Below are positions 48,421 through 64,000 of a stretch of DNA of 64,000 nucleotides, piece by piece. The notes under the pieces are model-generated. The model was not told where the DNA came from and ran no database searches. It saw only the letters and a program-made list of their open reading frames with translations. Positions within the stretch are counted from its first letter, which is position 1. Each line of letters starts with the position of its first letter. Where the stretch lies: IMG/VR virus record IMGVR_UViG_3300021962_000021, positions 124,001 through 188,000 of that record; one strand, given 5' to 3'. The translations under genes were made by a program, and so were the position numbers.

Positions 48421-48421
48421 T

Positions 48422-48967: not shown

Positions 48968-49596
48968 TGATAAAAAATTTAGAACAATATTCAATAGTTA
49001 GACCTATTGAACAAACTGCAGAAACATTAATTGATTTTGAAAATCTAATAGTAAAACATTGGGAAGAAGGAAAAATTAGAGGACCTATCCATCTTTCAAA
49101 CGGAAACGAAGAACAACTAATAGAAATTTTCAGTAGAATAAAAACTACCGATTGGGTATTTTCAACTTGGCGTTCTCATTACCATGCACTATTAAAGGGA
49201 GTTTGTCCCGTTTGGATTGAAGAAGAAATTCTAAAAGGAAAATCTATTACTCTTTGTAATATTGATGAAAAGTTTTATTCATCTGCAATAGTTGGTGGGA
49301 CATTATCCATTGCATTAGGCGTCGCAATGGGAATTAAAGAAAGGGGTAGTGATGAAAAAGTATTTGTATTTATAGGTGACATGTCTTTCGAAAGTGGTAT
49401 CTTCTATGAAGTTCACAAATATTCTAGAAACTTTAATTTACCAATTGTATTTGTTGTGGAAGATAATGGCGTTTCAACATACACACCGACCGAAGCAACT
49501 TGGAATGTAAAAAGAGAAATTCCATCGGATGTTATTCATTACACTTATAAATCAAAATATCCACATTACGGAAGTGGTAAGTGGGTAGTATTTTAA
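48967..49596 (+). CDS. ThDP-dependent enzyme, short PDH E1-alpha-like subunit
   Basis: GPIHLSNGNE, STWRSHYHAL, ThDP motif GDMSFESG...VVEDN; only 209 aa. Confidence 0.85.
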   Translation: MIKNLEQYSIVRPIEQTAETLIDFENLIVKHWEEGKIRGPIHLSNGNEEQLIEIFSRIKTTDWVFSTWRSHYHALLKGVCPVWIEEEILKGKSITLCNIDEKFYSSAIVGGTLSIALGVAMGIKERGSDEKVFVFIGDMSFESGIFYEVHKYSRNFNLPIVFVVEDNGVSTYTPTEATWNVKREIPSDVIHYTYKSKYPHYGSGKWVVF

Positions 49597-49597
49597 T

Positions 49598-50803: not shown

Positions 50804-51240
50804 AAGTAATAATTGATATAGATAATACACTTTGTATTAGTAATGAAAGATTTAGATTAGCAACAAAACCTGATGGAAAAATAGATTGGGATATTGCACA
50901 TAGAATAGACCTTATAGAAAAAGATAAACCAAACTGGCCAATGATTGATTTGGCAAAAAAATATAAGAAAGATGGATTCGAAGTTATTGTTTTAACAGGA
51001 AGACCAGAATCGGTTGAAAAGGTTACGGAAGAGTGGTTGGAAAAATATGGTGTAGAATATGACCAATTGATTATGAGAAATCGCAGTTCACATTTTTTAA
51101 AAGCTCCTGTTTATAAAGAGAAAGCATATAAAACTCTAATAAAATCAGATGTATTTTGTGCATATGATGATGAGGAAGAAATAATACAAATGTGGAATAG
51201 TTTGGGAATACCGGCATTTAAAGTTTATGGAATTGATTGA
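50800..51240 (+). CDS. HAD-family phosphatase (PseT phosphatase-domain-like)
   Basis: DIDNTL (motif I), LTGRP (II), K, AYDDE (IV). Confidence 0.85.
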   Translation: MKVIIDIDNTLCISNERFRLATKPDGKIDWDIAHRIDLIEKDKPNWPMIDLAKKYKKDGFEVIVLTGRPESVEKVTEEWLEKYGVEYDQLIMRNRSSHFLKAPVYKEKAYKTLIKSDVFCAYDDEEEIIQMWNSLGIPAFKVYGID

Positions 51241-52210
51241 TAAACATATAAAATTATTGTTACAACACAGAGATTTACAAAACCCAAACTCTTTTGAAGA
51301 TTTGGGTTATAATTTTTTTGGACCAATCGTTTTTAATTTTTTTGATTGGTTGCGAAAAGAATTAGATGGTTGTGATTTGGTTTTATTTAATTCCAGAGAA
51401 GGATATTTTTTTATAAAAATATATGAATTGTTTAAAGAAAAGTATAATTTACCAAAATACGAATATTTTAAAACATCAAGAAAATTATCAACTATTGCAT
51501 CTTTAAAAACGGAACAAGATATATACGATACATTTAAACTACACCGATATTCTGGCAATTTAAATGGTTTATTGAAGAATAGATTTGGAATAGATATTGA
51601 GGATAATTTTGATATTGATACATCTAAAGAAATTCCAAATTTAAGTAAATATGTTAATGATATTTTGAACAACGCGAAAAGAGTTAGAAGTGAGTATGGA
51701 AAGTATGTAAAGGATGTTATAGGTAATTCTAAAAATGTAATTATGGTTGATAGTGGATTTCAGGGAACAACACAATACAATATTCAAAACACATTTGCAG
51801 TAGAGCTTAAAGGTAGATATATAACATACAAAGGAAATTTACCATTAAAAGATACAAAAGGTTTTTGTGAATTTTATAAAGCGAATTTTAAAGATAACAT
51901 AATATTTTTTGAAAGCGTTTTTACTGATAAAATTGGCACATATATTGATATTACTGATAATAAATTTGTAAATGAAAATATCGAAGTTTTATTTTTTGAT
52001 GAAAAAGAAAAAATTGTAAATGGAGTATTACAATTTATAAAAGATGTATTTGATTTACAAATGGATTACGAAATATCTTATGAATACCCTGATTATATTT
52101 TTGATTTAATGTGTAAGACTGGTTATATAAAAAATGATATATTATTTGATATTTTTTTGCACGATAATTATTATGTAAGAGATAGTATTAAAAAAGTTAA
52201 TAGAATATAA
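51227..52210 (+). CDS. Putative glycan phosphoribosyltransferase (gPRT-like)
   Basis: LGYNFFGPIVFNFFDWL, LFNSREG, YFKTSRK, PRPP-loop-like MVDSGFQGTTQ, FESVF. Confidence 0.6.
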   Translation: MELIDKHIKLLLQHRDLQNPNSFEDLGYNFFGPIVFNFFDWLRKELDGCDLVLFNSREGYFFIKIYELFKEKYNLPKYEYFKTSRKLSTIASLKTEQDIYDTFKLHRYSGNLNGLLKNRFGIDIEDNFDIDTSKEIPNLSKYVNDILNNAKRVRSEYGKYVKDVIGNSKNVIMVDSGFQGTTQYNIQNTFAVELKGRYITYKGNLPLKDTKGFCEFYKANFKDNIIFFESVFTDKIGTYIDITDNKFVNENIEVLFFDEKEKIVNGVLQFIKDVFDLQMDYEISYEYPDYIFDLMCKTGYIKNDILFDIFLHDNYYVRDSIKKVNRI

Positions 52211-52211
52211 T

Positions 52212-53639
52212 ATGGAACATATGCATGGTTCTAAATTTAAATTAGTTTATACCGATTGGTATATACAGAGTGGTGAAAGAAAACCATTTGGTAATGGAAT
52301 TCATCCTGCAATAAGACAATTTATTCAATATGTTCATAGAAATAATTTGAATATAGATTATTATAGAATGTTACAATATGAACAAGAACAAAAAGGAATT
52401 CCATTTGACCATTCGGAATTATTAAATTATTTTGCAAGAAATTTTGAAAATAATATTATCAACATTACACAGATAGAAGATGATGAATATACATACATTT
52501 ATCCTTTAGAAATAAAAGCGACATTAAGTTATCTAACCGCAGAGAATAAATTTTTTTTAAATGATGTAAATTATGTTTGGAAACTAAAAGATATTATTCC
52601 AACGGAAATGATTGAATATTTTAAATCGGGAAAAGTAAAAATTTTAGTAAACATAATACACGACCCATTATATGATGATTACAATATAAGGGAGTTTGAA
52701 TTAGAAATGAACAAATTGGGTATAAATGGGTCTAATATTATTGTGTTAGGTGGTAGCGAATTTACAGAATATTATCAAAAACATCCACATAGTAAAGTAA
52801 AAATTTATAATGGCCATTTATTTATAAAGGGATATGCGGATATGATGAAAAAATTTCCAGAAAAGGGAGATTTAGGATATATTTGTGATTTGGCAAGAAT
52901 AGAAGATTTATCTGAAAATGCGATAAGACCTTACAAATTTTTGTGTAATAATAAAACAATGTCTAAACCACATAGAGTTGCAATGGCCTATTTTTCAATA
53001 AAATATGATTTACTATCGGAAGGGTTATTTTCTTTTATACAAAAATTATCAAAGGATGAATTATTGAGAAATGTTACATCTTTAATAGATAATCCAAATA
53101 AAGAATATATTGATACGATAGAATCAATGATACCATATGAATTGGATACACAAAATTTGGAAGAAAGACAAAAAGCACATTTCGGAGCAAAAAACAATAT
53201 GAAAGAATGGTATACGGATACATATATAAATTTAGTTACCGAAACTTTTTTTGGTAGAAATGTATTCTTATCGGAAAAAATATTTAAACCATTATCTAAT
53301 TTACAACCATTTATTGTATTAGGTGATTATGGAACATTGGCAGAATTAAAAAGATTAGGATTCAAAACATTTGAACCATTTATTGATGAGAGTTATGATT
53401 TAGAAATTGAAAGAAAAAAGAGAATTAAAAAAATTGAAATTGAAATTGAAAAATTAAAAAATAAATCAATAGAAGAAATACACAATTGGTATTATTCTAT
53501 AAAAGAAATACTTATACATAATCAGAATCATTTGTATACATTTGATAAATACGAATGTTTTGAAGAAATATTTCAAAAAATAAAATTAGATTACGAAAAA
53601 GAAAAGTTATGGAATTCTCAGGAAAAAAAGTTATTGTAA
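52212..53639 (+). CDS. Hypothetical protein, ET..SEK..KP family (possibly GT10-like glycosyltransferase)
   Basis: INLVTET..FLSEKIFKPLSNLQPFIVLG..LKRLGFKTF..IDESYD. Confidence 0.5.
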   Translation: MEHMHGSKFKLVYTDWYIQSGERKPFGNGIHPAIRQFIQYVHRNNLNIDYYRMLQYEQEQKGIPFDHSELLNYFARNFENNIINITQIEDDEYTYIYPLEIKATLSYLTAENKFFLNDVNYVWKLKDIIPTEMIEYFKSGKVKILVNIIHDPLYDDYNIREFELEMNKLGINGSNIIVLGGSEFTEYYQKHPHSKVKIYNGHLFIKGYADMMKKFPEKGDLGYICDLARIEDLSENAIRPYKFLCNNKTMSKPHRVAMAYFSIKYDLLSEGLFSFIQKLSKDELLRNVTSLIDNPNKEYIDTIESMIPYELDTQNLEERQKAHFGAKNNMKEWYTDTYINLVTETFFGRNVFLSEKIFKPLSNLQPFIVLGDYGTLAELKRLGFKTFEPFIDESYDLEIERKKRIKKIEIEIEKLKNKSIEEIHNWYYSIKEILIHNQNHLYTFDKYECFEEIFQKIKLDYEKEKLWNSQEKKLL

Positions 53640-54607
53640 CCGGAGCAAACGGATTGGTCGGATTACCAGCAGTTAAAAAATGTTTAGAAGAAGGTGCTGC
53701 AAAAGTATACGCAGTTGACCTTAGATTTAGTGAAAATTTAAACTTTCTAAAAGGACAGCATCCTGATAGATTGGTATTAATTAAAACGGATTTAACTTAT
53801 CTTTCTCATTGTGAAGATTTATTCACTATGGATAAGATTGATATTGTATTACATATCGCGGGTGTAAAAGGTTCACCGGCTCGTTCATCAACGCAACCAG
53901 CAGATTACCTATTCCCAATGTTGATGTTCAATACTAATATGATTAAAGCATCATTTGATGCAAAGGTAGATTGGTTTGTATATCTTTCATCGGTTGGTGT
54001 ATATAAGCCGGCAGAAGTAATGAATGAAGAAGATACTTGGAATCAGGAAGAAACTTGGGCATCAACTCCATCTCGTTTAGATTGGCATCCAGGTTGGACA
54101 AAAAGAATGGGTGAATTAACATTGGATTCTTTAAGAGTTCAATATGGTTGGAAAAATTGGACAGTAATTAGACCTTCAAACATATATGGTATTAATGATA
54201 ACTTTGCACAAGATGCAACGGTGATTAGTTCTAATATTTGGAAATTATTTAATGTAGAGGGTGAGGAAATGGTATGTTGGGGTAATGGTTCTTCTCGTAG
54301 AGATTTCGTATTTGGTGATGATGTTGCACAAGCTACAATTGATGTAGTTAAAAAGGAAGTTAGTGATATTATCAACTTTGGATGTGCAGAAGCAGTAACT
54401 ATTAAAGAAACAATTGAAACTATTGTAGAATGTTATAAAGAATTAACAGGAGAAACCAAAACTATTGTATGGGATGAAACCAAAACAAATGGTGACCCAA
54501 TTAGATGTTTAGGTTCTAAAAAACAAAAACAATATAGTATTCTTCCACAAACATCATTAAAGGAAGGTATTATGAAATCTATTAAAGAATATAAGAGTAG
54601 ATTATAA
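53609..54607 (+). CDS. GDP-fucose-synthase-like extended SDR with non-canonical active site
   Basis: TGANGLVG, RPSNIYG, WGNGSSRRDF; YxxxK is replaced by PGWTK. Confidence 0.8.
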   Translation: MEFSGKKVIVTGANGLVGLPAVKKCLEEGAAKVYAVDLRFSENLNFLKGQHPDRLVLIKTDLTYLSHCEDLFTMDKIDIVLHIAGVKGSPARSSTQPADYLFPMLMFNTNMIKASFDAKVDWFVYLSSVGVYKPAEVMNEEDTWNQEETWASTPSRLDWHPGWTKRMGELTLDSLRVQYGWKNWTVIRPSNIYGINDNFAQDATVISSNIWKLFNVEGEEMVCWGNGSSRRDFVFGDDVAQATIDVVKKEVSDIINFGCAEAVTIKETIETIVECYKELTGETKTIVWDETKTNGDPIRCLGSKKQKQYSILPQTSLKEGIMKSIKEYKSRL

Positions 54608-55290
54608 TGGAAATGTATGCATTTGGTTGCTCCTTTACGGATGGCGTTGGGTTGCAAAATAATAAAACAGAAGCATATCCCATATTATTGGGTAAAAAGT
54701 TGGGATTAAATGTTTATAATATGGGGTCTGCGGGACAATCTAATGATTATATTTTTAGAAATGTTTTTGCACATTTAAAAACTCATATAAAAAAAGATGA
54801 CATTATTTTAATTCAATGGACACATTATATAAGAAAAGAAATTCCAATACAATATAATAATAGAAATTTATATTTAGTTGCACCCAATTGTTTCAATGCA
54901 TTACAAACCGGAACAGCGGATAGTTTATCAAAAAATTGTGTAGGCCAGTATGTTAATCAAAATTTAGAAAGTGATAATGAAGAAATAAAAAAAGAGTATA
55001 AGGATTTTTATAATGAATATATTCTTAAAGCATTGCATGAGGAATATCAAATAACAACAACTGAAAATTATATAAATTCTTTATACACATATCTTGAACA
55101 TAATGGATATAAACACATTCATTTTTTTGGTTGGGATTCTTGTAAAGAACCTTTTAATTTTTATTTTAATAAAATATTAGAAGATACTTTTGGTGGATAC
55201 ACAAATACAAAAAATAATGACCATCCTGATAAAATTGGACATGAGAATTGGGCAAATTATTTAGAAGATAAAATAAAAAAAATGTTATGA
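54607..55290 (+). CDS. SGNH/GDSL-like protein
   Basis: FGCSFTDG, GSAGQSN, IQWT, DHPDKIGH. Confidence 0.65.
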   Translation: MEMYAFGCSFTDGVGLQNNKTEAYPILLGKKLGLNVYNMGSAGQSNDYIFRNVFAHLKTHIKKDDIILIQWTHYIRKEIPIQYNNRNLYLVAPNCFNALQTGTADSLSKNCVGQYVNQNLESDNEEIKKEYKDFYNEYILKALHEEYQITTTENYINSLYTYLEHNGYKHIHFFGWDSCKEPFNFYFNKILEDTFGGYTNTKNNDHPDKIGHENWANYLEDKIKKML

Positions 55291-56324
55291 AACATATAGT
55301 AGTATCGGGTTGTTCATTTACAAATAATTTTAGAATTAATATAGGAGATGAAAGGAGATGGGAAAATGACCCAATAGAAGATTGGACATGGGCAAATTGG
55401 TTACAATATAATTTACAAAAGACTCATGTTTTACACAACTATGGTGCACTAACACATGATAATAAAAGTATTGTTCGTTCTATAATTTATAAAGTTACGG
55501 ATTTATTAAAAGAAGGAATTAATCCGGAAGATATATCAGTAATTGCACAATGGACAACATTGACAAGAAATTCTTTTTTTATTACTCCCGAAAAATACGA
55601 TAGTGTAAATCCTGCATTAAGATATCAAAAGTATAATGAAAGTTGGGCTCACACCACAGATTATCTGATAAACGGTAAAGATAAAGTATCACCGTATCAG
55701 CAGGGGTATTTTCACCTAACAGGTGGATTTAATCCTACAAATAATCCAATTAATATAGACCCGGTTACATTTGAATGGTTAGATAAAGTAATGACATATA
55801 ACGAAAGATATTTTGAATGGTTTGAATATATGAACATGCTTTTAGATTTTCTTCACAATAAAGGAATTACAAAAATTAAGTTTTTTTGTATGAATAATAA
55901 TTTTAGTAAAAAATATTTAGGTGAAGGAAGAACACCACCATATTATCATACACCAAAGGAAAAATCCGTATACGAATGTATTATAGAAAATAAAGATATT
56001 TGTAATACTTGGGAACAAAAAGAATTACAATTTGAAAATGCATATGTAAAATCATATGCCGATAAAATAGATTTCAAAAAATATTTTTGGTTTTTTGAAG
56101 AAAATTCCTTACATTTGTTTGGTGGTCTAATTGAATGGTCAATTAGAAATTTTGATTACAATATGGATAGTGATTTACCAAAAGTATTGTGGAGAGAAAT
56201 GAATGGAATGGATTTAGACGAACAAAAAAAATATTTAGAAAGAAGTTGGTATGGGCACACATCATCTATACTAACTAAAAAATTTGTTAATGATGTGGTA
56301 TTAAATTGGGATATTTTAAAATAA
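55287..56324 (+). CDS. SGNH/GDSL-like protein
   Basis: SGCSFT, AQWT, C-terminal GHTS. Confidence 0.55.
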   Translation: MKHIVVSGCSFTNNFRINIGDERRWENDPIEDWTWANWLQYNLQKTHVLHNYGALTHDNKSIVRSIIYKVTDLLKEGINPEDISVIAQWTTLTRNSFFITPEKYDSVNPALRYQKYNESWAHTTDYLINGKDKVSPYQQGYFHLTGGFNPTNNPINIDPVTFEWLDKVMTYNERYFEWFEYMNMLLDFLHNKGITKIKFFCMNNNFSKKYLGEGRTPPYYHTPKEKSVYECIIENKDICNTWEQKELQFENAYVKSYADKIDFKKYFWFFEENSLHLFGGLIEWSIRNFDYNMDSDLPKVLWREMNGMDLDEQKKYLERSWYGHTSSILTKKFVNDVVLNWDILK

Positions 56325-56328
56325 ATTT

Positions 56329-57321
56329 ATGAATAAAACGGACAAGATTTTAGTTACAGGAGCAAGTGGTTTTATCGGCTCACACCTATTGAGATTATTA
56401 TGGGAAAAAGGATATAGAAACCTAAGAGCAACATCTTATAGTAGAGATTTAAAAAACGATTTCGAAGGAACATCGGAAGTTGAATTTTACAAAGGAAATT
56501 TACAAGATGCGGATTTTTGTAAAGAAGTTTCTAAAGATGTAAATGTAGTATTCCACTGCGCAGCAAACACATCAAACGCATTGGATACGAAAGAAAATCC
56601 ACTATTACATGTTACTCCAAATGTGGAAATGAATGTAAATTTAATGGAACAAAGTTGGAGAAATAGTGTAAGTAAATTCTTATTCATTTCATCTAATACT
56701 TCTTATCCTGATATGGGTAGTGATTGGTGCACAGAAGATATAAATGTTCATGCAACACCTACATTTCCAATTTATGGAGCAGTTGGTAATATGAAAAGAT
56801 ATGGTGAATTACTTTGTCATTTCTTCTCAAATCAAATTCATAACCCAATGCAATGTTTGATTGTTAGACCTTCAAATGCATTCGGACCAAACGACAAATT
56901 TGATTATGAAAAATGTCATGTTACTCCTGCAAACATCAGAAAAGTAGCAGATGGCTTAAATCCAATTCCAGTGTGGGGTGATGGAACGGAAGTTAGAGAT
57001 TTGTTGCATGTAGAAGATATGGCAGATGGTTTTATCTTTGTTGCAGAAAATAATGACAAGTATGATATATTTAATGTTTGTTATGGAGAAGGATTTAGTG
57101 TAAACGAAGTATTAAGTTGGATTAAAGAAGCAGATAACAACAATAATCCAGTTGAATATGTGAATAACAAAGCACCTATGATTCCGGTTAGATTAATGTC
57201 ATCTAAGAAAATAAACGCTGCAGGTTGGAAACCTAAGAGAGATTTAAAAACTGCTTTAAAAGAAACTATCGAATGGTATAAAGCAAATAAACATTTGTAT
57301 AATCCAAATTCAAAACCATAA
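56329..57321 (+). CDS. GDP-fucose-synthase-like extended SDR with non-canonical active site
   Basis: TGASGFIGS, RPSNAFGPNDKFD, CHVTPANIRK, WGDGTEVRD; YxxxK is replaced by VGNMK. Confidence 0.85.
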   Translation: MNKTDKILVTGASGFIGSHLLRLLWEKGYRNLRATSYSRDLKNDFEGTSEVEFYKGNLQDADFCKEVSKDVNVVFHCAANTSNALDTKENPLLHVTPNVEMNVNLMEQSWRNSVSKFLFISSNTSYPDMGSDWCTEDINVHATPTFPIYGAVGNMKRYGELLCHFFSNQIHNPMQCLIVRPSNAFGPNDKFDYEKCHVTPANIRKVADGLNPIPVWGDGTEVRDLLHVEDMADGFIFVAENNDKYDIFNVCYGEGFSVNEVLSWIKEADNNNNPVEYVNNKAPMIPVRLMSSKKINAAGWKPKRDLKTALKETIEWYKANKHLYNPNSKP

Positions 57322-57863
57322 TGAGTAAGCCAGAATTTTCACCATATAAGGATGAATTGACAAAAGCAATGAATTTTCTTTCTGAAAAAGAGGATACGGT
57401 TTTCATTGGACAGCAAATAGTTTATGCCGGAAATCCAATGTCAACTACATTGAATGATGTTCCAAAGGAAAAAATGATTGAAGTTCCTGTTATGGAAGAA
57501 ACACAAATGGGAATGAGTTTAGGACTTGCAATAACAGGTAAAACGGTAATATCATTTTATCCAAGATGGGATTTTTTAGTTTCCGCAGCAAATCAGTTAA
57601 TTAATCATGCTGATAAATTTGAACATATGACCGGTAAAAAGGTCAATGTTATTGTTAGAGTCGGTGTTGGTAGTAAAGACCCATTGGATCCAGGTATTCA
57701 GCATAGAAACGATTATACCGATGAATTCCAATCAATTCTTCAATTTACAAAAGTTCATAAATTAAAAAAAATAGAAGATATTTATAAAATATATACTGAA
57801 GCATATGAGCAAGGTGGTATTCATATAATAGTGGAATGGCCTGAATTATATTATAAAAACTAA
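57321..57863 (+). CDS. ThDP-dependent enzyme, short PDH E1-beta/transketolase pyrimidine-binding subunit
   Basis: EVPVMEETQMGMSLGLA, YPRWDFL..AANQLIN, PGIQH; only 180 aa. Confidence 0.85.
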   Translation: MSKPEFSPYKDELTKAMNFLSEKEDTVFIGQQIVYAGNPMSTTLNDVPKEKMIEVPVMEETQMGMSLGLAITGKTVISFYPRWDFLVSAANQLINHADKFEHMTGKKVNVIVRVGVGSKDPLDPGIQHRNDYTDEFQSILQFTKVHKLKKIEDIYKIYTEAYEQGGIHIIVEWPELYYKN

Positions 57864-57866
57864 ATT

Positions 57867-57995
57867 ATGTTTAAAAAATTACCTATCATCTCATTTTTCA
57901 TTAAAAAATATGAAAATTATAAGATGAAAAAGAAAATTCAGAAAAAATTAGAGGAACTCAAAAAGAGAGACCCATTCGTTTATAAGAATTTCTAA
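57867..57995 (+). CDS. Small basic hypothetical protein (42 aa), missed by ORF track
   Basis: MFKKLPIISFFIKKYENYKMKKKIQKKLEELKKRDPFVYKNF*; fills the gap on the coding strand. Confidence 0.65.
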   Translation: MFKKLPIISFFIKKYENYKMKKKIQKKLEELKKRDPFVYKNF

Positions 57996-58004
57996 TATTT
58001 TAGG

Positions 58005-58013
58005 ATATTTATA
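58005..58013 (+). promoter_or_regulatory. Putative late promoter ATATTTATA
   Basis: 4 nt (from the 8-mer) before the ATG at 58017. Confidence 0.55.
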
Positions 58014-58016
58014 TGT

Positions 58017-61000
58017 ATGAATTTAATAAACGAAGTAGATAAACCGGAAATTAAGAAAACTGTTGTAATATTTTCAGGCAGATTTCAACCCTTTCATAGA
58101 GGACATTATGCAACATATGAGCACTTAGTGTCAAAATTTGGTGCTGCAAATGTTTACATAGGAACATCAAATGACCAATCTGGTCCAAAATCTCCGTTTG
58201 GATTTAAAGAAAAAAAGGAAATTGCAACAAAGATGTTTGGTATTCCTTCAAATAGATTTATACAAATTCGTAATCCATATCAACCGATTGAAATACTTAA
58301 AAAATTCGATGGACAAACTACGCAATATATTGCAGCAGTAGGAGAGAAAGATGCAACAAGATTGCAAGGTAAATACTTTAAACCATATAAAGGCAAAGCT
58401 GGATATGGTTATGATGAAATTGGTTATGTTTATCCGGTACCAGCAGAACAAAATCCAATAAGCGGAACGGATGTTAGAAATGCATTAGGTAGTGGGAATG
58501 ATGAAAAAGCTAAAAAGTTTTTTCTAAAAGCATATCCAAAATTTGATAAAGAAATATATAAAATGATAACAGGAAAGTTAAATGAGAATTTTATAAAAGG
58601 TTATCCATCAAAAGAAGATGTTAAAAAAATCCAAAAGAAAAATGATGATATTCGTTCAGTAGCAACTACGGATGATTCATATGTATATGACCCAATTGCA
58701 GAATTAATTGGTAGAGTGGCAGCAGAAGAGATGTTTAATGAATTTATTTTAGAATATTTGGATGAAGCACCTAATAAAGCATTAGACCAAGACATCACTT
58801 ATACAAATAGTAAAGGCCAGCAAAAGAAAATTAAAGCCAGGGATGCATTAAGATTACCAAAAGACCATCCAGCTCACGTACAAGCAGCTAAAATAGCAGG
58901 ACCGGATGATGCACCTGTGAATGAACCAAAAGCAAAAAAAGAACCAGGAAAAGCAGCTCAAAAAGCAGCAGAACCATCTCAGCCTGGTCAACCAACCAAA
59001 AAAGACCAAACCCAACAAGGAAAAATAGATAAAGAAAAATCATCTACCAGTGCACAATCTGGAAAAGAACAAGGTCCACCACCTGAACAAAAATTAAGTG
59101 GAACTGAATTAAAATCTTCAGCAGAAACTACACCTAAAGACCAAAAAGCCGAAAAAGTAAAACAAGCATTGGATGGTGCAAGAAAAGAGTTATCAAAAGA
59201 AGATAACCAAACTATTGATAAAGTAAACAACCCACAATCTCCGGAAAGAAAAGGAATGATGGGTAACATTAAAAATGGTTTAAAAAAGATTGGTGATGGA
59301 TTAGGACATTGGGCAAAGCATAAGGCAGAAATGGTCGGTGGAACGGTTGATGCAGTAAAAGCATTAGCAAATGGACAGAAAATTGGTTCTACTAAAAATA
59401 AAGAAACAGGCGAATGGGAATACTCCGATGAAAAAAGAAAAGAACAGATAAAACATATAAAACACTTTGCATTGGATGCTGGATTGTTAATAGGTTCTAT
59501 GGCATTGGGTGGAGCTGGAGTTGCAGGAGTAAAAGCAGTGATGGCAGGTAAAGGAGCGGCCGCAGCGGGTTCTGCAGCATTACACGGCGCCGCTGGTGCA
59601 TTTACACATGGTGCCGTTGGATTTGGTGCACATTTGGGTAAAGATATTGCAAAACACGCCGCATTGGAAACATTAGGATTGGGAGGAGTTAGCGCAGCAG
59701 GTGGTGGAGCAGCGTTATCCATAGCAACGGGTGGGATATTGGAAATGATTAATGAAGAAATTGATGATAACAACAAATTTATATCAAACTTTATGAGAAA
59801 GGTTGTCGAAAAAATGGAAACATATCAACTTTCCGATGAACAACTACTCAAATCTATTGAAAATTATAAGAAAAATAAACCAAAACAAGATGCAGCCGAT
59901 TTGTTAAGAGAAAACCTTTCAGAAACAAAACAACAATCAATTCAACATTTTGTAGAGTTTGCAACTAAAAGATTAAAATTACAAGAAACACCAAAAGTTA
60001 ATTTAGTAGGTGGTGGAGAATTTGCAGAAATAAAAACCAGTTTAGGGGGATTTGACCCTGAAACAAAAGAAATATATGTTGCAACCGAAGGAAGATTAAC
60101 GGCGGATATTTTAAGAACTCTTGCACATGAAATGGTTCACAGAAAGCAAGATGAAATGGGATTGGTTAGAAATCCTATGAAAGATGGTGCAGATGGTTCT
60201 CCAATAGAAAACCAGGCGCATGCAGTTGCGGGTATTCTAATGAGGGAATATGGTAGAATTAACAAACAAATATATCAAGAAGGAAAAAACTCACCGGCAT
60301 ATAAAGGACCGGAAGGATACGATGATAGTTGCGATTGTTATCCAAATGAAGATATTAACTTAGATGTTGATAAGGGTGATACTTTATTGATGGGAAAGTT
60401 TAAAAACAAAAAAGTTACAGTAAAAGATATTGGTGTAGATGACCACGGAATGCCAACAATCAATGGTAAGCAAGCAACTACATTTCGTAAAGTAGATGAA
60501 ATGGGCAGTAAGGATATTCATTTTAAAAATATTTTAGATAAACTAAAAAACGGAAACTATACAACAAGAAAGAAGATAGCAATGGCAATTGTCGGTAAGT
60601 ATAATGCAAGTAGAGATACCATTGTAAGAGCTTTGCGTAATATGGGATATGATGATATTACAAATGTTGAAAAGCAAGCCGGAATAGAATTAAATGAAAA
60701 TTTATTATTAGAAGGTGGTGCATATGGACACATGTCGCATCCATTTGATGATATGGATTTAACATTTGGTGACCTTAAAAATATAATTACAGGAGCACTG
60801 AATGGTGATTTGGGTGTAGTAAGAGAGAAAACCGATGGACAAGCATTAGCTATCAGTTGGAAGAATGGTAGATTGATTGCAGCAAGAAACAAAGGACATT
60901 TAGCAAATGCTGGAGCAAATGCTATGGGTATTGAAGATGTTGCATCAAAGTTTGCCGGAAGAGGTGGATTAACCGATGCATACAATTTCGCAATGAGAGA

Positions 61001-61901
61001 TTTATCAGCTGCAATTAGTTCTCTATCAGAAGCACAAAGGAAAAAAATATTCAACGAAGGACAATGTTTTATGAATTTGGAAGTAATATGGCCAACTTCG
61101 GTAAATGTTATTCCTTATGGACAGGCTTTATTAGTATTCCACAATACAACATGTTATGATGAGAAAGGTGTTGCAATTGGAGCAGACCAAGGAGCATCAT
61201 CTACATTAGCAGGAATGATTAAGCAAGTAAATGCAGATGTTCAATCAAAATATACAATACAAGGCCCGCCTATTACTTCAATTCCAAAAGATGAAAACCT
61301 TTCTTCTAAACAAGGAAAGTATTTATCAAAATTAAGTAAACTACAATCTGAATTTAAATTATCCGATAGTGATACGGTTGCACTTTATCATCAGAGTTGG
61401 TGGGAAAATTTTATAGATAAAAAATCTCCAGTTAAAGTTGATAAATTAACAAAAGAAGCTTTAGTAAGAAGATGGGCATTTGGTGATAAATCGTTTAGAT
61501 TAAATACAATATCAAATCCTAAGTTACAAGAGTGGGCAATAGAGAACGATAAAGTAAATGTAGAAAAACAACAAAAAGAAAATATAAAACCATTTGAAGA
61601 AATATTTTTAAGTGTTGGAGCAGATGTATTAGATTTTGTAAGTTCAGTATTGACAGTTCATCCGGAAAAAGCAATAAGAGCAATAAAGAATAAATTTAAA
61701 TCAGTTGCATCTGAAGTTAGAGGGAGTGGAGATAAAACAAAAATACAAAAACTTAAATCGGAATTAAAAAGATTAAATGATTTAGGTGGAATTGATAGAA
61801 TAGTTGCATCTGAAGGTTTGGTATTTTTCTATAACGGAAAAACATATAAATTGACAGGAACATTCGCACCGTTAAATCAAATATTAGGATTATTTTATTA
61901 A
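58017..61901 (+). CDS. Multi-domain protein: HIGH nucleotidyltransferase + hydrophobic Gly/Ala segment + HExxH metallopeptidase + RNA-ligase-like nucleotidyltransferase
   Basis: GRFQPFHRGH...ISGTDVR; AHEMVH...E; EKTDG...EGLVF...YKL. Confidence 0.75.
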   Translation: MNLINEVDKPEIKKTVVIFSGRFQPFHRGHYATYEHLVSKFGAANVYIGTSNDQSGPKSPFGFKEKKEIATKMFGIPSNRFIQIRNPYQPIEILKKFDGQTTQYIAAVGEKDATRLQGKYFKPYKGKAGYGYDEIGYVYPVPAEQNPISGTDVRNALGSGNDEKAKKFFLKAYPKFDKEIYKMITGKLNENFIKGYPSKEDVKKIQKKNDDIRSVATTDDSYVYDPIAELIGRVAAEEMFNEFILEYLDEAPNKALDQDITYTNSKGQQKKIKARDALRLPKDHPAHVQAAKIAGPDDAPVNEPKAKKEPGKAAQKAAEPSQPGQPTKKDQTQQGKIDKEKSSTSAQSGKEQGPPPEQKLSGTELKSSAETTPKDQKAEKVKQALDGARKELSKEDNQTIDKVNNPQSPERKGMMGNIKNGLKKIGDGLGHWAKHKAEMVGGTVDAVKALANGQKIGSTKNKETGEWEYSDEKRKEQIKHIKHFALDAGLLIGSMALGGAGVAGVKAVMAGKGAAAAGSAALHGAAGAFTHGAVGFGAHLGKDIAKHAALETLGLGGVSAAGGGAALSIATGGILEMINEEIDDNNKFISNFMRKVVEKMETYQLSDEQLLKSIENYKKNKPKQDAADLLRENLSETKQQSIQHFVEFATKRLKLQETPKVNLVGGGEFAEIKTSLGGFDPETKEIYVATEGRLTADILRTLAHEMVHRKQDEMGLVRNPMKDGADGSPIENQAHAVAGILMREYGRINKQIYQEGKNSPAYKGPEGYDDSCDCYPNEDINLDVDKGDTLLMGKFKNKKVTVKDIGVDDHGMPTINGKQATTFRKVDEMGSKDIHFKNILDKLKNGNYTTRKKIAMAIVGKYNASRDTIVRALRNMGYDDITNVEKQAGIELNENLLLEGGAYGHMSHPFDDMDLTFGDLKNIITGALNGDLGVVREKTDGQALAISWKNGRLIAARNKGHLANAGANAMGIEDVASKFAGRGGLTDAYNFAMRDLSAAISSLSEAQRKKIFNEGQCFMNLEVIWPTSVNVIPYGQALLVFHNTTCYDEKGVAIGADQGASSTLAGMIKQVNADVQSKYTIQGPPITSIPKDENLSSKQGKYLSKLSKLQSEFKLSDSDTVALYHQSWWENFIDKKSPVKVDKLTKEALVRRWAFGDKSFRLNTISNPKLQEWAIENDKVNVEKQQKENIKPFEEIFLSVGADVLDFVSSVLTVHPEKAIRAIKNKFKSVASEVRGSGDKTKIQKLKSELKRLNDLGGIDRIVASEGLVFFYNGKTYKLTGTFAPLNQILGLFY

Positions 61902-61913
61902 AATTAAAAAGTT

Positions 61914-62585
61914 ATGCAAAAAAGAACCAGTTTTGACCAAAAAAACAAATACATTCACAAATCTCGTAAAAAGATTATTGATACCGTATTTGGTAGAGAA
62001 GATAATACACAAAGAGTCTTTGGTTATGAAAAAGTAGAAGATACTACAAAAAGAGAAGTTGGAGAAAAGTGGACTGATGCCGATGGTAAAGAGTGGGAGC
62101 AAAGAGAAGGATACAAAGTTGCCGTATCTCAAATGGATGATGTTAGAGATTATTTAAAAAAATTAACTACATGTAAAAATTCAGAATGTAAAACAACAAC
62201 TTATACCAAAGCCGATAAAAAACTTATAGTAAGAGCCGGTTATTGTATTAATTGTAATATTGAATTTGAAGCAAAATTGAAAAAAGAAGGTGTTTATCCA
62301 TTTTATGAAGATTACAAAATAACTTCTAATAAAATTGGATGGTTAAGAGATTATAAACAAAAAATGGAAGATAGTTTAAAATATATTACAAAAGATTATC
62401 AAATGGTTTATGAAAATGGACATGTTGAAAATTGGAATTGGGATATAGATATAGATAAGGTAAAAGCAGATTTAAAAAATGATATAGATAGTTCTTATGA
62501 AGCATTGGAATTATTAATACATAGAAAAAGGTTATTGGAAGATAAGTTACGAGAATTAAATTATGAAGAACTAATAAAAAATTAA
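61914..62585 (+). CDS. Hypothetical protein with putative Zn finger
   Basis: CKNSEC...CINC; REVGEKWTDADGKEWEQ. Confidence 0.7.
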   Translation: MQKRTSFDQKNKYIHKSRKKIIDTVFGREDNTQRVFGYEKVEDTTKREVGEKWTDADGKEWEQREGYKVAVSQMDDVRDYLKKLTTCKNSECKTTTYTKADKKLIVRAGYCINCNIEFEAKLKKEGVYPFYEDYKITSNKIGWLRDYKQKMEDSLKYITKDYQMVYENGHVENWNWDIDIDKVKADLKNDIDSSYEALELLIHRKRLLEDKLRELNYEELIKN

Positions 62586-62587
62586 TT

Positions 62588-63244
62588 ATGAAAAAATTAT
62601 TGAATTTTAAAAACATTGCTATCGCAGCATTGATTATTTACATTTTATTACAATGGTTTAACCCAGGTGGAGTTATGCCAGGTGGAAGAACTATCAGAAT
62701 TGATGGTAAAAAATATGAAGTATTAAAGCACACAATCGACACGGTTGAAGTAGAAAAATTAAAAGTAGTTACTAAAAAAGGAAAAGATATTGTACATGAA
62801 GTAATTGATGTGGATACTTTAGTTTTAAAAGAATTGGTAAATGTAGATTCTGCAGCAATTCTTAAAGATTATTTATCAAAAGTAATTTATAAAGATACAT
62901 TATTCCTTCCTGATTCATTAGGAACTGTTTCATTAGTTGATACTATTACTAAAAACAGAATATTAGGTAGAACATTTGACGCAAAAGTAAAACAAAGAGA
63001 AATAAAAGAAACTCTTATTGTTAAAGAACCGGCTAAACACCAACTTTATTATGGTTTAAATGGTGGATTCAACAAAGCAGATGTGGTATCTCATGTAGGA
63101 GCAGGTTTAATGTTAAAAACCAAAAAAGATAAATTATATCAATTTGGTGTAGGTGTTACAAATAGAACAGTTGATGGAACAAATGGTTCATTATCACCGT
63201 TTATAAATTTTGGAACATATTGGAAAATTAAATTGAAAAAATAA
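62588..63244 (+). CDS. Membrane-anchored protein (possibly spanin/Rz-like)
   Basis: N-terminal TM helix (IAIAALIIYILLQWF) and beta-rich C-terminus ending YWKIKLKK. Confidence 0.5.
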   Translation: MKKLLNFKNIAIAALIIYILLQWFNPGGVMPGGRTIRIDGKKYEVLKHTIDTVEVEKLKVVTKKGKDIVHEVIDVDTLVLKELVNVDSAAILKDYLSKVIYKDTLFLPDSLGTVSLVDTITKNRILGRTFDAKVKQREIKETLIVKEPAKHQLYYGLNGGFNKADVVSHVGAGLMLKTKKDKLYQFGVGVTNRTVDGTNGSLSPFINFGTYWKIKLKK

Positions 63245-64000
63245 TGAGTGTTCAAGGGCAACCAAAGAAAACACTTAAAGAGATAATTGCTGATGAATAT
63301 CGTAGATGTGCGGGAGACCCCATCTACTTTATGAAAAAATATTGTATGATTCAGCACCCGGTGAGAGGTAAAATACCCTTTCACCTTTATCCTTTCCAGG
63401 AATCTTGTTTGACAGATTTTAAAGATAATCGTTTTAACATAATTCTTAAAAGTAGACAATTGGGTTTATCTACACTTTCTGCCGGTTATATTCTTTGGAA
63501 AATGATATTCAATCAGGATTTTAACGCCTTAGTAATTGCAACCAAAGTGACCGTTGCAAAAAACTTAGTAGAGAAAGTAAGAGTTATGCATGACCTCCTT
63601 CCTGTTTGGTTGAGAGATGGTGGAACAGCGGCAGCTGAAGATAATAAACTTTCTCTTAAATTAAAAAATGGTTCACAAGTAAAAGCAATCGCATCTTCTC
63701 CAGATGCCGGACGTTCGGAAGCCTTATCACTACTTGTTGTGGATGAGGCAGCTTTCATTAGAGATATTGATGAAATTTGGTTATCAGCACAATCAACCTT
63801 ATCAACGGGTGGTTCTGCTATTGTATTATCTACACCAAATGGTGTTGGTAACTGGTTTCATAAAATGTGGGTTGAAGGTGAAAATGGAACGAATGGATTT
63901 AATACGATAAAACTTCATTGGACAGTTCACCCAGAAAGAAATCAGGCTTGGAGAGATGAACAAACTCGTATCTTAGGAGTTAAGGGTGCAGCACAAGAAT
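63244..64000 (+). CDS. terL: Terminase large subunit, T4 gp17-like (3'-truncated; absent from ORF track)
   Basis: Translated by hand: DPIYFMKKYCMIQHP..LYPFQ..ILKSRQLGLST (Walker A)..LLVVDEAAF (Walker B)..LSTPNG (motif III)..FHKMW. Confidence 0.95.
   Translation, partial: MSVQGQPKKTLKEIIADEYRRCAGDPIYFMKKYCMIQHPVRGKIPFHLYPFQESCLTDFKDNRFNIILKSRQLGLSTLSAGYILWKMIFNQDFNALVIATKVTVAKNLVEKVRVMHDLLPVWLRDGGTAAAEDNKLSLKLKNGSQVKAIASSPDAGRSEALSLLVVDEAAFIRDIDEIWLSAQSTLSTGGSAIVLSTPNGVGNWFHKMWVEGENGTNGFNTIKLHWTVHPERNQAWRDEQTRILGVKGAAQE

What the first reader, a model, noticed from the sequence alone, without database searches (positions are those of the whole stretch)
58005..61901. 1294-aa late protein looks like a head-packaged effector polyprotein cut at L/I-x-E sites
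Seen: in order, a HIGH nucleotidyltransferase (~58050-58570), a K/P/Q linker, a ~90-aa Gly/Ala hydrophobic stretch (~59470-59745), a HEMVH...E zincin (~59950-60270), a short GDTLLMGKFKNK module, and a KxDG...EGLVF...K RNA-ligase-like domain (~60715-61900). Nearly every boundary has L/I-x-E or a similar motif (LINE, KLNE, ILEYLDE, ILEMINE, LRENLSE, LNENLLLE), and a late-type promoter precedes the gene. Known: the T4 gp21 protease cleaves after L/I-x-E in head proteins; large phages carry polyvalent proteins with metallopeptidase and nucleotidyltransferase domains. Inference: the pieces are injected to counter defences (NAD or nucleotide restoration, RNA repair, proteolysis), with the hydrophobic segment acting at the membrane.
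Basis: partly seen in the sequence, partly recalled or inferred. Interest (0 to 1): 0.78.

Follow-up and report, generated by a model that had tools for sequence, protein, structure and literature searches.

The report
Likely capsid-packaged multi-enzyme phage polyprotein
A 1294-residue late protein of an uncultured T4-like phage joins an NMNAT-like nucleotidyltransferase, a small zinc protease and a new RNA-ligase-like enzyme, and sequence evidence suggests, without proving, that the phage's head protease cuts it into pieces that are packed in the capsid and injected with the DNA.

Summary
The ORF (58017-61901, +, 1294 aa) is intact and every named motif is present.

**Domains**
- An HxGH nucleotidyltransferase closest to archaeal/NadM NMNAT.
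- A minimal HExxH+E zincin.
- A mobile ~50-aa module of unknown function.
- A C-terminal covalent nucleotidyltransferase of RNA-ligase fold. AF2 pLDDT is 91 and Z is about 9 to Rnl5/Rnl1/Rnl2. KxDG, E, EG and K are invariant, and a ~170-aa helical insert is present. No Pfam model matches it.

**Family and context**
- The ligase family has 1881 clusters at 50% identity.
- It sits in fixed synteny: X, one or two small genes, TerL, T4 portal, S77 (gp21-type) prohead protease.

**L/I-x-E sites**
- They are not enriched overall (14 against 11.5).
- They cluster at junctions (12 against 4.5 expected).
- Two are conserved family-wide: in the N-terminal leader and directly before the ligase domain (47 of 61).
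- They are depleted inside the enzyme domains (ratio 0.55-0.63; controls about 1.0).

**Stand-alone versions**
Stand-alone NTase, zincin and ligase genes in other phages carry short leaders ending in L/I-x-E at the same junctions. Some leaders are shared between unrelated genes of one genome, as with the T4 capsid-targeting sequence.

**Verdict**
The polyprotein reading is well supported in silico but unproven. The effector roles are inferred. The upstream motif is phage-specific, not the T4 late consensus.

The parts
58005..58012 (+). Upstream motif ATATTTAT, 12 nt (motif start to ATG) before the start codon
   Evidence: The same + strand motif lies 12-31 nt before the ORFs starting at 9762, 16407, 21818, 23767, 29723 and 30741. 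In all, 9 of its 11 + strand copies lie in gaps between ORFs or just before an ORF start. The T4 consensus TATAAATA is present here only on the minus strand.
58017..61901 (+). Whole CDS, 1294 aa ('X')
   Evidence: An identical copy lies in the IMG/VR contig fetched as L006.
58017..58034 (+). N-terminal leader MNLINE, a putative propeptide ending in I-x-E
   Evidence: L/I-x-E is kept in 9 of 10 close orthologues. More distant members have longer leaders that also end in [IL][LMV]xE. T4 Alt loses a 7-residue propeptide (PMC9026906).
58059..58571 (+). HxGH (HIGH) nucleotidyltransferase domain, NMNAT-like. GRFQPFHRGH is at residues 21-30 and ISGTDVR at 148-154.
   Evidence: Pfam PF01467 at 22.7 bits; PHROG 395. 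A family profile hits archaeal/NadM NMNAT structures at E 2e-9, aligning both motifs. Invariant residues are listed.
58572..58916 (+). Post-NTase junction segment with four L/I-x-E sites (188, 227, 244, 248)
   Evidence: 4 observed against 1.1 expected, P = 0.013. Sites 188 and 227 are kept in 9/12 and 9/11 close orthologues.
58917..59276 (+). K/P/Q/E-rich low-complexity linker
   Evidence: Composition. Found only in close relatives (7 of 269 proteins).
59469..59732 (+). Gly/Ala-rich (55%) hydrophobic stretch with glycine-zipper-like spacing and repeated HG
   Evidence: Found only in close relatives (15 of 269). Marginal as a membrane helix (KD19 peaks 1.63 and about 1.3).
59733..59996 (+). 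Helical junction segment with five L/I-x-E sites (574, 578, 630, 634, 655)
   Evidence: 5 observed against 1.85 expected, P = 0.019. LRENLSE aligns with the end of the leader MNYKQFLRE of the stand-alone cyanophage zincin.
59922..60296 (+). Minimal zincin metallopeptidase-like domain. HEMVH is at 60126-60140; the putative third ligand E731 is at 60207-60209.
   Evidence: H, E, H and E are invariant in 28 sequences. AF2 pLDDT is 75-87 over the core. Best Foldseek matches are abylysin, selecase, IrrE and CapP, with probability up to 0.97 but E >= 0.13. Atlas look-alikes are M78/IrrE-like viral proteins. A stand-alone 124-aa homologue exists in Synechococcus phages.
60357..60521 (+). Mobile ~50-aa module (GDTLLMGKFKNK...), function unknown
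   Evidence: Present in 90 of 269 family proteins at varying positions. Always preceded by Glu (35 of 35). Low AF2 confidence. No family match.
60522..60680 (+). Small four-helix (HTH-like) domain
   Evidence: AF2 pLDDT about 85. Weak matches to the C.Esp1396I controller protein.
60690..60713 (+). Junction LNENLLLE; putative cleavage after E899, directly before GGAYGH
   Evidence: [LI]xE immediately before GG in 47 of 61 diverse family members and 11 of 11 close orthologues. The segment is disordered in the model (pLDDT < 50). Stand-alone ligases have 10-20-aa leaders ending here, or start exactly at M-GG.
60714..61898 (+). Covalent nucleotidyltransferase (RNA-ligase-like) domain. Residues: K938 of KTDG (60828-60830), R957, E1022, E1266 of EGLVF (61812-61826), K1278 (61848-61850).
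   Evidence: AF2 pLDDT 91.1, pTM 0.85. VIA Z 8.9-9.1 to Naegleria Rnl5 and T4 Rnl1, and 8.0-8.2 to T4 Rnl2, over about 185 residues. Top Foldseek hits are all RNA or DNA ligases or capping enzymes. There are 1881 clusters at 50% identity. A split intein sits between K and TDG in a relative.
61293..61799 (+). About 170-aa all-helical insert between motif IIIa and motif IV of the ligase-like domain
   Evidence: Secondary structure of the model, residues 214-382 of the piece. The structural alignments to ligases skip it.
61914..63244 (+). Two conserved small genes (223 and 218 aa) between X and the large terminase
   Evidence: The 223-aa gene follows X in nearly all 80 loci. No family hits.
63244..64000 (+). 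Start of the large terminase gene, which runs off the window
   Evidence: Translation. The full gene is in L006, followed by the T4-type portal and the Peptidase_S77 protease.

Best explanation
X is a capsid-targeted polyprotein of the T4 internal-protein/Alt type, built in the style of 'polyvalent' proteins.

**Proposed mechanism**
1. X is made late, together with structural genes.
2. Its short N-terminal leader takes it into the prohead core.
3. There the phage's gp21-type S77 protease cuts after Glu of L/I-x-E. It removes the leader and cuts at retained inter-module junctions, most clearly ...LLLE|GGAYGH.
4. Separate enzymes then lie in the head and enter the cell with the DNA: an NMNAT-like HxGH nucleotidyltransferase, a minimal zincin, small modules, and a lysine-nucleotidylating RNA-ligase-like enzyme.
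5. The NTase and the ligase form a conserved functional pair. They most likely act on nucleotides and broken RNA at the very start of infection, as repair or counter-defence.

**Shown**
- Domain identities and folds.
- The S77 protease in the same genome.
- The synteny.
- Conservation, placement and depletion of L/I-x-E.
- Shared leaders on stand-alone modules.

**Inferred**
- Packaging, cleavage and injection.
- Substrates, and any counter-defence role.
For: 1. **Protease in the same phage.** Peptidase_S77 lies 8.4 kb downstream (L006). TerL is present in 65 of 65 related loci and S77 in 24 of 25 related loci that have enough downstream DNA. Microcystis phage Mel-JY01 shows the same arrangement.
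2. **Conserved sites.** [LI]xE is kept in the N-terminal leader while the flanks vary. It lies directly before the ligase domain in 47 of 61 members, in a segment the model leaves disordered.
3. **Junction clustering in X.** 12 sites against 4.5 expected.
4. **Depletion inside domains.** [LI].E is depleted in ligase domains (121 against 221, ratio 0.55) and NTase cores (0.63).
   - Controls [LI].D and [VM].E are not depleted in the ligase domains. In the NTase cores [LI].D is also low (31 against 48.5), so the NTase result is less specific.
   - TerL is 1.01, portal 0.92, other window proteins 1.09.
   - The S77 protease itself is 2.2-fold enriched.
5. **Stand-alone modules carry leaders ending at the same junctions.**
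   - Ligase: MRNIGPYLIE|GG.
   - NTase: MIQIGPYIITE|.
   - Cyanophage zincin: MNYKQFLRE|.
   - In one contig the GPY[IL]..E leader heads at least five unrelated genes.
   - One stand-alone ligase starts exactly at M-GGAYGH.
6. **Leader profile.** Among 1560 ORF N-termini, its non-X hits are almost all head-module proteins: prohead-core-like proteins, the S77 protease and two neighbours. The one exception is a 99-aa gene beside TerL in phage immuto. All are weak, E 0.03-0.9.
7. **T4 precedent.** CTS propeptides of 7-10 residues are removed by gp21, and the CTS has been proposed as an evolutionary route for packing varied proteins (PMC9026906).
8. **Polyvalent-protein precedent.** A zincin hub, with packaging in phages that have a portal and terminase (PMC5512222).
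9. **NTase-ligase linkage.** The two are fused in at least 109 of 269 family proteins and are adjacent genes where unfused.
Against: - There are no virion proteomics for any family member, and no cultured close relative. Only Mel-JY01 and two huge-phage assemblies carry the ligase domain among 50,697 phage records.
- About 15% of members have LLxC or LLLM instead of LLxE before GG. Some members have no leader at all.
- The motif before the ligase domain could be part of the enzyme rather than a cleavage site.
- The depletion and conservation statistics rest on related sequences, so the z-scores are inflated.
- I chose the junction limits myself.
- In the contig with stand-alone genes (L090/L094) the neighbours are repair-type enzymes, not head genes, and no S77 was seen in the 17.6 kb read.
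- The cyanophage virion 'cytidylyltransferases' reported in PMC9146016 and PMC10665884 are not detectably related to this NTase, so they lend no direct support.
- The leader of X itself is only 6 residues long.
Confidence: 0.5

Rival explanations
1. X is a cytoplasmic multi-enzyme made late or in mid-infection, for example for RNA or DNA end repair and nucleotide metabolism. It is not packaged. The L/I-x-E pattern then reflects helical linkers or enzyme features, not protease sites.
For: - The upstream neighbours in the window are metabolic sugar-modifying enzymes.
- In L090/L094 the stand-alone ligase and NTase lie among Metallophos, HD, P-loop kinase, PDDEXK and methyltransferase genes.
- L/I-x-E is not enriched overall.
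- C and M variants occur at the pre-ligase position.
Against: This reading does not explain:
- the specific depletion of [LI].E, but not [LI].D or [VM].E, inside the ligase domains, with TerL at 1.01;
- the shared leaders on unrelated genes of one genome;
- the resemblance of the leader to head-module propeptides;
- the near-invariant position next to the head and packaging genes.
Confidence: 0.25
2. X is a classical polyvalent protein. It is packaged or injected largely intact and cut by its own zincin domain, before packaging or after entry. The S77 protease at most removes the leader.
For: - The zincin has an intact HExxH+E site.
- Iyer et al. 2017 propose zincin-mediated autoprocessing for polyvalent proteins (PMC5512222).
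- The same small zincin module is fused to other enzymes in viral proteins, namely CTP_transf_like, NTP_transf_2, NT5C and Sod_Fe.
Against: - The zincin is present in only 36 of 269 family proteins, whereas the conserved L/I-x-E sites are family-wide.
- Stand-alone zincins themselves carry L/I-x-E leaders, which makes them look like cargo rather than the processing enzyme.
Confidence: 0.15
3. The ligase-like domain works as an assembly factor, like T4 gp63 (RNA ligase 1, which also promotes tail-fibre attachment). On this reading X is a morphogenetic helper rather than an effector.
For: - T4 Rnl1 is among the best structural matches.
- X lies after tail-fibre and glycosylation genes in relatives: a Peptidase_S74 fibre protein is upstream in L003.
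- The dual role of T4 gp63 is my own knowledge.
Against: - The Rnl1 C-terminal domain is absent.
- The catalytic residues are strictly conserved, and an intein sits at the catalytic lysine. Both point to selection on the enzymatic activity.
- The link to an NTase and the L/I-x-E features are not explained.
Confidence: 0.05

Closest known systems
T4 internal head proteins and Alt (CTS-targeted, gp21-processed, injected)
   Same: - The phage has a T4-type portal and a Peptidase_S77 protease.
- A short N-terminal leader ends in L/I-x-E. The leader of X is 6 residues; that of T4 Alt is 7.
- Leaders are shared between unrelated cargo genes in relatives.
- An enzymatic cargo is plausibly delivered with the DNA.
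   Different: - There is no sequence relation to IPI-III or Alt.
- X is far larger and multi-enzyme.
- Internal junction sites would make it a polyprotein, which is not described for T4 cargo.
- Packaging has not been demonstrated.
Polyvalent proteins of phages and conjugative elements (Iyer et al. 2017, PMC5512222)
   Same: - One polypeptide combines disparate enzymes with a zincin-like metallopeptidase.
- It is encoded by a portal-terminase phage.
- It is predicted to be delivered early.
   Different: - The HIGH NTase plus KxDG-ligase combination is not in that survey: 'cytidylyltransferase' occurs 0 times, and RNA ligases are reported as not associated.
- Processing here appears tied to the prohead serine protease rather than to the zincin.
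ATP-dependent RNA ligases Rnl1, Rnl2 and Rnl5 (covalent nucleotidyltransferase superfamily)
   Same: - The nucleotidyltransferase fold (Z about 9).
- Motif order: I (KxDG), Ia, III, IIIa, IV (EG), V (K), with invariant catalytic-type residues.
   Different: - No Pfam or PDB sequence match.
- None of the known accessory domains is present (Rnl1-C, Rnl2-C, Rnl5-N, OB).
- A ~170-aa helical domain is inserted between motifs IIIa and IV.
- A conserved GGAYGHMxHPFDD segment precedes motif I.
- Motif V has a single Lys.
- The nucleotide donor and the substrate are unknown.
Archaeal/NadM-type NMN adenylyltransferase, including the phage NadM-Nudix and NadR-like enzymes of jumbo phages (PMC7824862)
   Same: - The GRFQPFHxGH and ISGTxxR motifs.
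- The best profile matches are NMNAT structures (E 2e-9).
- One stand-alone ligase is followed by a NUDIX gene.
   Different: - Only the two nucleotide-binding motifs align.
- Scores are far below the NCBIfam NMNAT cut-offs (29 bits against 127 or more).
- The substrate-binding middle part is divergent.
- The fusion partner is a ligase, not a Nudix hydrolase or a kinase.
Minigluzincins / ImmA-IrrE (M78) minimal zincins
   Same: - A core of about 110 residues with three strands, the HExxH helix and a following helix carrying Glu.
- The best fold matches are abylysin, selecase, IrrE and CapP.
   Different: - The fold E-values are weak (>= 0.13).
- Pfam hits are below threshold.
- No target is known.

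Membership tests
Covalent nucleotidyltransferases (ATP/NAD ligases, capping enzymes) | Motif I KxDG with the catalytic lysine | tested here: met
   KTDG is at 938-941. K, D and G are invariant in 61 diverse sequences. hhalign places it on the EKIHG of T4 Rnl2, though the overall score is not significant.
Covalent nucleotidyltransferases (ATP/NAD ligases, capping enzymes) | Motifs III, IIIa, IV (EG) and V (K) in order, on beta strands | tested here: met
   E1022 and E1266 are at least 90% conserved; G1267 and K1278 are invariant. All lie on predicted strands in the canonical order.
Covalent nucleotidyltransferases (ATP/NAD ligases, capping enzymes) | Nucleotidyltransferase fold | tested here: met
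   VIA Z is 8.9-9.1 to Rnl5 and Rnl1 and 8.0-8.2 to Rnl2, over about 185 residues. The top 47 Foldseek rows are ligases or capping enzymes, but E >= 5.6e-3 and TM is 0.2-0.25 because of the insert.
Covalent nucleotidyltransferases (ATP/NAD ligases, capping enzymes) | Formation of a lysyl-NMP intermediate and end joining | not testable with these tools
   Needs biochemistry.
Named RNA ligase families Rnl1 / Rnl2 / Rnl3 / Rnl5 | Sequence membership (Pfam RNA-ligase models) and the family-specific accessory domain | tested here: not met
   No Pfam, NCBIfam or PDB sequence hit for residues 880-1294. The domain ends right after motif V and carries an internal helical insert instead.
HxGH (HIGH) nucleotidyltransferase superfamily | HxGH motif and ISxTxxR-type motif on a Rossmann-like core | tested here: met
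   HRGH is at 27-30 and ISGTDVR at 148-154. G21-H30, T151 and R154 are invariant. Pfam PF01467 is above its cut-off.
NMN adenylyltransferase (NadM/archaeal type) | Equivalog-level similarity and NMN-binding residues | tested here: inconclusive
   The best PDB profile hits are NMNATs (E 2e-9), but only over the two motifs. NCBIfam scores are far below the cut-offs. NMN-contact residues were not mapped.
Zincin metallopeptidases (minigluzincin / M78-like) | HExxH plus a third ligand on the next helix | tested here: met
   H704, E705, H708 and E731 are invariant in 28 sequences and lie on helices 121-139 and 155-183 of the model.
Zincin metallopeptidases (minigluzincin / M78-like) | Fold and family-level match | tested here: inconclusive
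   Foldseek probability is 0.93-0.97 and TM by target 0.55-0.58 to abylysin and selecase, but E is 0.13-0.19. The Pfam DUF6647 and DUF6782 hits are below cut-off.
T4-type CTS-targeted, gp21-processed head cargo | gp21-type (S77) prohead protease and T4-type portal in the same genome | tested here: met
   L006 is 100% identical to the window over X and extends 10 kb further. Peptidase_S77 has E 3e-32. S77 is present in 24 of 25 related loci.
T4-type CTS-targeted, gp21-processed head cargo | N-terminal propeptide ending in L/I-x-E, shared among cargo proteins | tested here: met
   The evidence is sequence pattern only.
T4-type CTS-targeted, gp21-processed head cargo | Presence in the virion as a processed form, and ejection into the host | not testable with these tools
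   No proteomic data were found for any family member.
Polyvalent proteins (Iyer et al. 2017) | Several unrelated enzymatic domains plus a zincin hub in one polypeptide of a portal-terminase phage | tested here: met

The most novel reading that the evidence does not exclude
The fusion is a prohead-protease-processed polyprotein, a strategy typical of RNA viruses and not described for tailed-phage cargo. It delivers a coupled two-enzyme system. In that system the NMNAT-like domain makes or regenerates the nucleotide cofactor or an activated intermediate (for example NAD+ from NMN, or an adenylylated 5' end). A previously undescribed class of RNA-ligase-like enzyme uses it. Injected repair could then work in cells whose NAD or ATP pools or tRNAs have just been attacked by defence systems. 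The conserved NTase-ligase linkage, fused or adjacent, is the Rosetta-stone hint. Nothing in the data tests the chemistry.
Probability: 0.12. Interest if true: 0.85.

Novelty: new variant of a known kind. Interest (0 to 1): 0.72.

Why it matters
- **Reach of the T4 mechanism.** If the model holds, the T4 capsid-targeting and gp21-processing mechanism would be a general, modular delivery system. It would operate in a very abundant, almost uncultured clade of T4-like phages: more than 1800 protein clusters, and 559 of the first 600 candidate stretches in IMG/VR.
- **A new cargo strategy.** Cargo enzymes would be either tagged one by one or strung together as a polyprotein that the head protease cuts.
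- **A sequence rule to test.** It gives a rule for finding injected phage effectors in metagenomes: a leader ending in L/I-x-E, with that motif depleted inside the cargo domains.
- **A new enzyme family.** It defines an RNA-ligase-like family with no Pfam model, tightly linked to an NMNAT-like enzyme. That pair is a candidate for early counter-defence or RNA repair chemistry.

Tried and rejected
- **Megablast.** Searching 56000-64000 against 50,697 phage records found no match.
- **Sequence searches for the ligase part.** Pfam, NCBIfam and PHROGs gave nothing. A PDB profile search gave only spurious eS6, TetR and GntR hits in the Lys-rich helical insert.
- **hhalign of the family against T4 Rnl2.** Probability 1%, not significant, although motif I aligned.
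- **Middle piece.** The AF2 model has mean pLDDT 64. The ~50-aa module and its flanks are unmodelled. AFDB/Swiss-Prot gave nothing useful, and Atlas scores for 776-892 were at most 0.69, which is not meaningful.
- **T4 late promoter.** Rejected, because the consensus is on the wrong strand.
- **Cyanophage virion 'cytidylyltransferases'.** Considered as support but set aside, because tblastn finds no similarity to this NTase.
- **Immuto Flavobacterium phages.** These are the closest isolates by TerL (54%), but they have no X homologue.
- **Literature.** No paper on Mel-JY01 was found in the library.
- **tRNAs.** None in the window.
- I dropped that row and sent it nowhere else.
- **T4 positive control.** I considered a control for the depletion test using T4 Alt and the internal proteins. 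I did not run it, because single proteins give too little power.

Full report
**1. Observation**

The window is AT-rich (about 30% GC) and all its large ORFs lie on the + strand. The ORF at 58017-61901 is intact and encodes 1294 aa. The linker composition and the 55% Gly+Ala stretch are as described. That stretch is only marginally hydrophobic enough for membrane helices.

**2. N-terminal domain**

- Residues 15-185 match Pfam CTP_transf_like just above its cut-off, and PHROG 395.
- A profile of 48 family members hits archaeal and NadM NMN adenylyltransferase structures at E 2e-9. It aligns GRFQPFHxGH and the SGTxxR motif.
- NCBIfam NMNAT models score far below their cut-offs.
- So this is a HIGH nucleotidyltransferase that is NMNAT-like. 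Its substrate is not established.

**3. C-terminal domain**

- No sequence library recognises residues 880-1294.
- An exhaustive HMMER search finds 1881 clusters at 50% identity. In nearly all of the best 150 the domain sits at the extreme C-terminus, behind N-terminal parts of 0 to 1500 residues.
- An alignment of 61 diverse members shows invariant K, D and G of KxDG, an invariant Arg, a conserved Glu, an EG pair and a final invariant Lys.
- AlphaFold2 gives pLDDT 91.
- The top 47 Foldseek hits are RNA ligases, DNA ligases or capping enzymes, with weak E-values.
- VIA-align gives Z 8.9-9.1 to Naegleria Rnl5 and T4 Rnl1, and about 8 to T4 Rnl2, over about 185 residues.
- The conserved residues lie on strands in the canonical motif order. 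A ~170-residue helical domain is inserted before motif IV.
- This is a covalent nucleotidyltransferase of the RNA-ligase kind, but not a member of any named Rnl family.
- In a 104-109 kb metagenomic relative (L003/L004) the orthologous gene is 'fractured'. A split intein sits exactly between K and TDG, and a free-standing ORF lies between the halves. Inteins favour active sites, so this supports the catalytic role of that lysine.

**4. Middle part**

- The zincin has invariant HExxH plus Glu and a moderately confident model.
- Its best fold matches are minigluzincins, IrrE and CapP, but they are weak. Atlas look-alikes are M78-like.
- A 124-aa stand-alone homologue exists in Synechococcus phages.
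- The GDTLLMGKFKNK module recurs in 90 of 269 family proteins at different positions. It remains unidentified.
- The K/P/Q linker and the Gly/Ala stretch occur only in close relatives.

**5. Genome context**

- L006 (IMG/VR) is 100% identical over X and extends 10 kb beyond the window.
- Downstream of X lie a 223-aa and a 218-aa gene, TerL, a T4-type portal, small head-module proteins and a Peptidase_S77 protease (Pfam E 3e-32).
- Among 80 related loci, TerL follows in 65 of 65 with at least 3.5 kb downstream, and S77 in 24 of 25 with at least 9.5 kb. Mel-JY01 has the same order.
- By TerL, the closest isolates are Flavobacterium phages of the genus Immutovirus (54%) and Mel-JY01 (52%).
- Upstream of X in the window is a sugar-modification cluster.

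**6. The L/I-x-E question**

- *Counts in X.* The total is at chance level. However, 12 of 14 sites fall in junction segments, against 4.5 expected. The domain cores hold 2 against 5.7 expected.
- *Close orthologues.* The sites at 4, 188, 227, 574 and 897 are mostly kept.
- *Family-wide sites.* Two sites stand out.
  - The N-terminal leader ends in [IL][LMV]xE in most members, although its other residues vary.
  - [LI]xE lies immediately before the invariant GG of the ligase domain in 47 of 61 members. The exceptions include LLxC and LLLM.
- *Depletion.* [LI].E is depleted inside the ligase domains (121 against 221 expected) and the NTase cores (25 against 40).
  - [LI].D and [VM].E are not depleted in the ligase domains. 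[LI].D is also low in the NTase cores (31 against 48.5), so the NTase depletion is less specific.
  - TerL (1.01), portal (0.92), the two small genes and the other 50 window proteins (1.09) are not depleted.
  - The S77 protease family is 2.2-fold enriched.
- *Caveat.* The sequences are related, so these z-scores overstate significance. The contrast with the controls is what counts.

**7. Stand-alone modules and shared leaders**

- In contig L090/L094 the ligase (419 aa) and the NTase (182 aa) are separate genes. Both start with M..IGPY(I/L)I.E, and the ligase leader ends exactly at ...E|GGAAGH. Three more unrelated ORFs of that locus carry the same leader.
- In L089 the ligase starts exactly at M-GGAYGH and is followed by an NTase gene.
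- The cyanophage zincin starts MNYKQFLRE. That leader aligns with the internal LRENLSE of X and resembles the T4 CTS. Many other stand-alone zincins have L/I-x-E leaders.
- In immuto phages, two unrelated genes next to TerL begin with leaders like those of the X family.
- A leader HMM finds 16 weak non-X hits among 1560 N-termini. Apart from one, the 99-aa gene beside TerL in immuto, all are head-module proteins.
- So each junction of X corresponds to a leader-domain junction of a separately encoded protein.

**8. Interpretation**

The pattern matches the T4 paradigm. In T4, CTS propeptides of 7-10 residues target varied proteins to the prohead core, and gp21 removes them after L/I-x-E (PMC9026906). 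The architecture also matches polyvalent proteins (PMC5512222).

I therefore favour a capsid-targeted polyprotein processed by the S77 protease (confidence 0.5). The rivals are a non-packaged enzyme (0.25), zincin autoprocessing (0.15) and an assembly role (0.05).

The recurrent NTase-ligase linkage argues that the two enzymes act together. Roles in NAD salvage or RNA repair are plausible but untested. Neither this fusion nor this ligase family appears in the surveys read.

**9. Promoter**

The T4 late consensus is on the wrong strand. The + strand ATATTTAT just upstream of X recurs 12-31 nt before six other large ORFs, several of them next to baseplate genes. This is consistent with co-regulation with structural genes.

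**10. Verdict**

Novelty: a new variant of known kinds (T4 CTS cargo, polyvalent proteins) that contains an undescribed ligase-like family.

Noticed in passing
L003 4875-11176 (and L004): The orthologue of X is a fractured gene. The N-part ends ...LTREK followed by an N-intein and a stop. A free-standing 244-aa ORF (DUF7487-like) follows. The next ORF starts with a 35-aa C-intein ending HN|TDG. The large terminase of the same contig also carries an intein.
   Followed up: partly
L090 3710-13051 / L094 1508-16297: At least five unrelated ORFs of one phage contig begin with the same leader (..GPY[IL][IA].E), among them the stand-alone NTase and ligase. Their neighbours include Metallophos, HD_4 and a zeta/AAA_33-like kinase, which gives the locus an RNA-repair flavour.
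   Followed up: partly
L086 7609-8909 (Flavobacterium phage immuto): A PduO-like adenosyltransferase gene and a 99-aa gene lie directly upstream of TerL. Both start with near-identical leaders (M.(D)NF.L..FL.ENKL......LKE) that resemble X-family leaders. They may be another set of capsid-targeted cargo.
   Followed up: no
window 9740, 16388, 21787, 23752, 29711, 30721, 58005 (+ strand): The motif ATATTTAT lies 12-31 nt upstream of seven large + strand ORFs. It is probably a phage-specific promoter or initiation-region element. Start codons lack obvious Shine-Dalgarno sequences, as in phages of Bacteroidota.
   Followed up: partly
window 2931-3305: A second, small (124 aa) ORF carries an HxGH-type motif (GRWQTWHAGH). 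It has no Pfam hit.
   Followed up: partly
window 47449-57863, and 5099-6793: There is a cluster of sugar- and cofactor-modifying genes just upstream of X: two NAD-dependent epimerases/dehydratases with Pfam hits (a third ORF, 47449-48420, has the Rossmann start but was not scanned), a radical SAM enzyme, GDSL-like hydrolases and a transketolase-like fragment. A Nol-like carbamoyltransferase lies at 5099-6793.
   Followed up: partly
window 26562-29711: SbcD-like and SbcC-like parts are fused in a single 1049-aa ORF.
   Followed up: no
L003 about 8600-8900 and family members P0167, P0186, P0214, P0218, P0238: Members with LLxC instead of LLxE before the ligase domain have a different preceding segment. 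In L003 that segment looks like an in-frame HNH nuclease domain, judged by motif only.
   Followed up: no
S77 proteases of the related loci (e.g. L006 19601-20191): The protease family itself is 2.2-fold enriched in L/I-x-E (197 against 89 expected) and 4-fold depleted in L/I-x-D. This is consistent with extensive self-cleavage.
   Followed up: partly
L088 244-2163 (Mel-JY01 WWT39297): In the only cultured phage with this family, the NTase motif is degenerate (GRFQPMGIHH instead of ..FHxGH), while the ligase motifs and the IAE|GG junction are intact.
   Followed up: no
Atlas clusters: The small zincin module is structurally matched in viral proteins that also carry CTP_transf_like, NTP_transf_2, NT5C or Fe-superoxide dismutase domains. 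This suggests that the module is a common companion of phage cargo enzymes.
   Followed up: no
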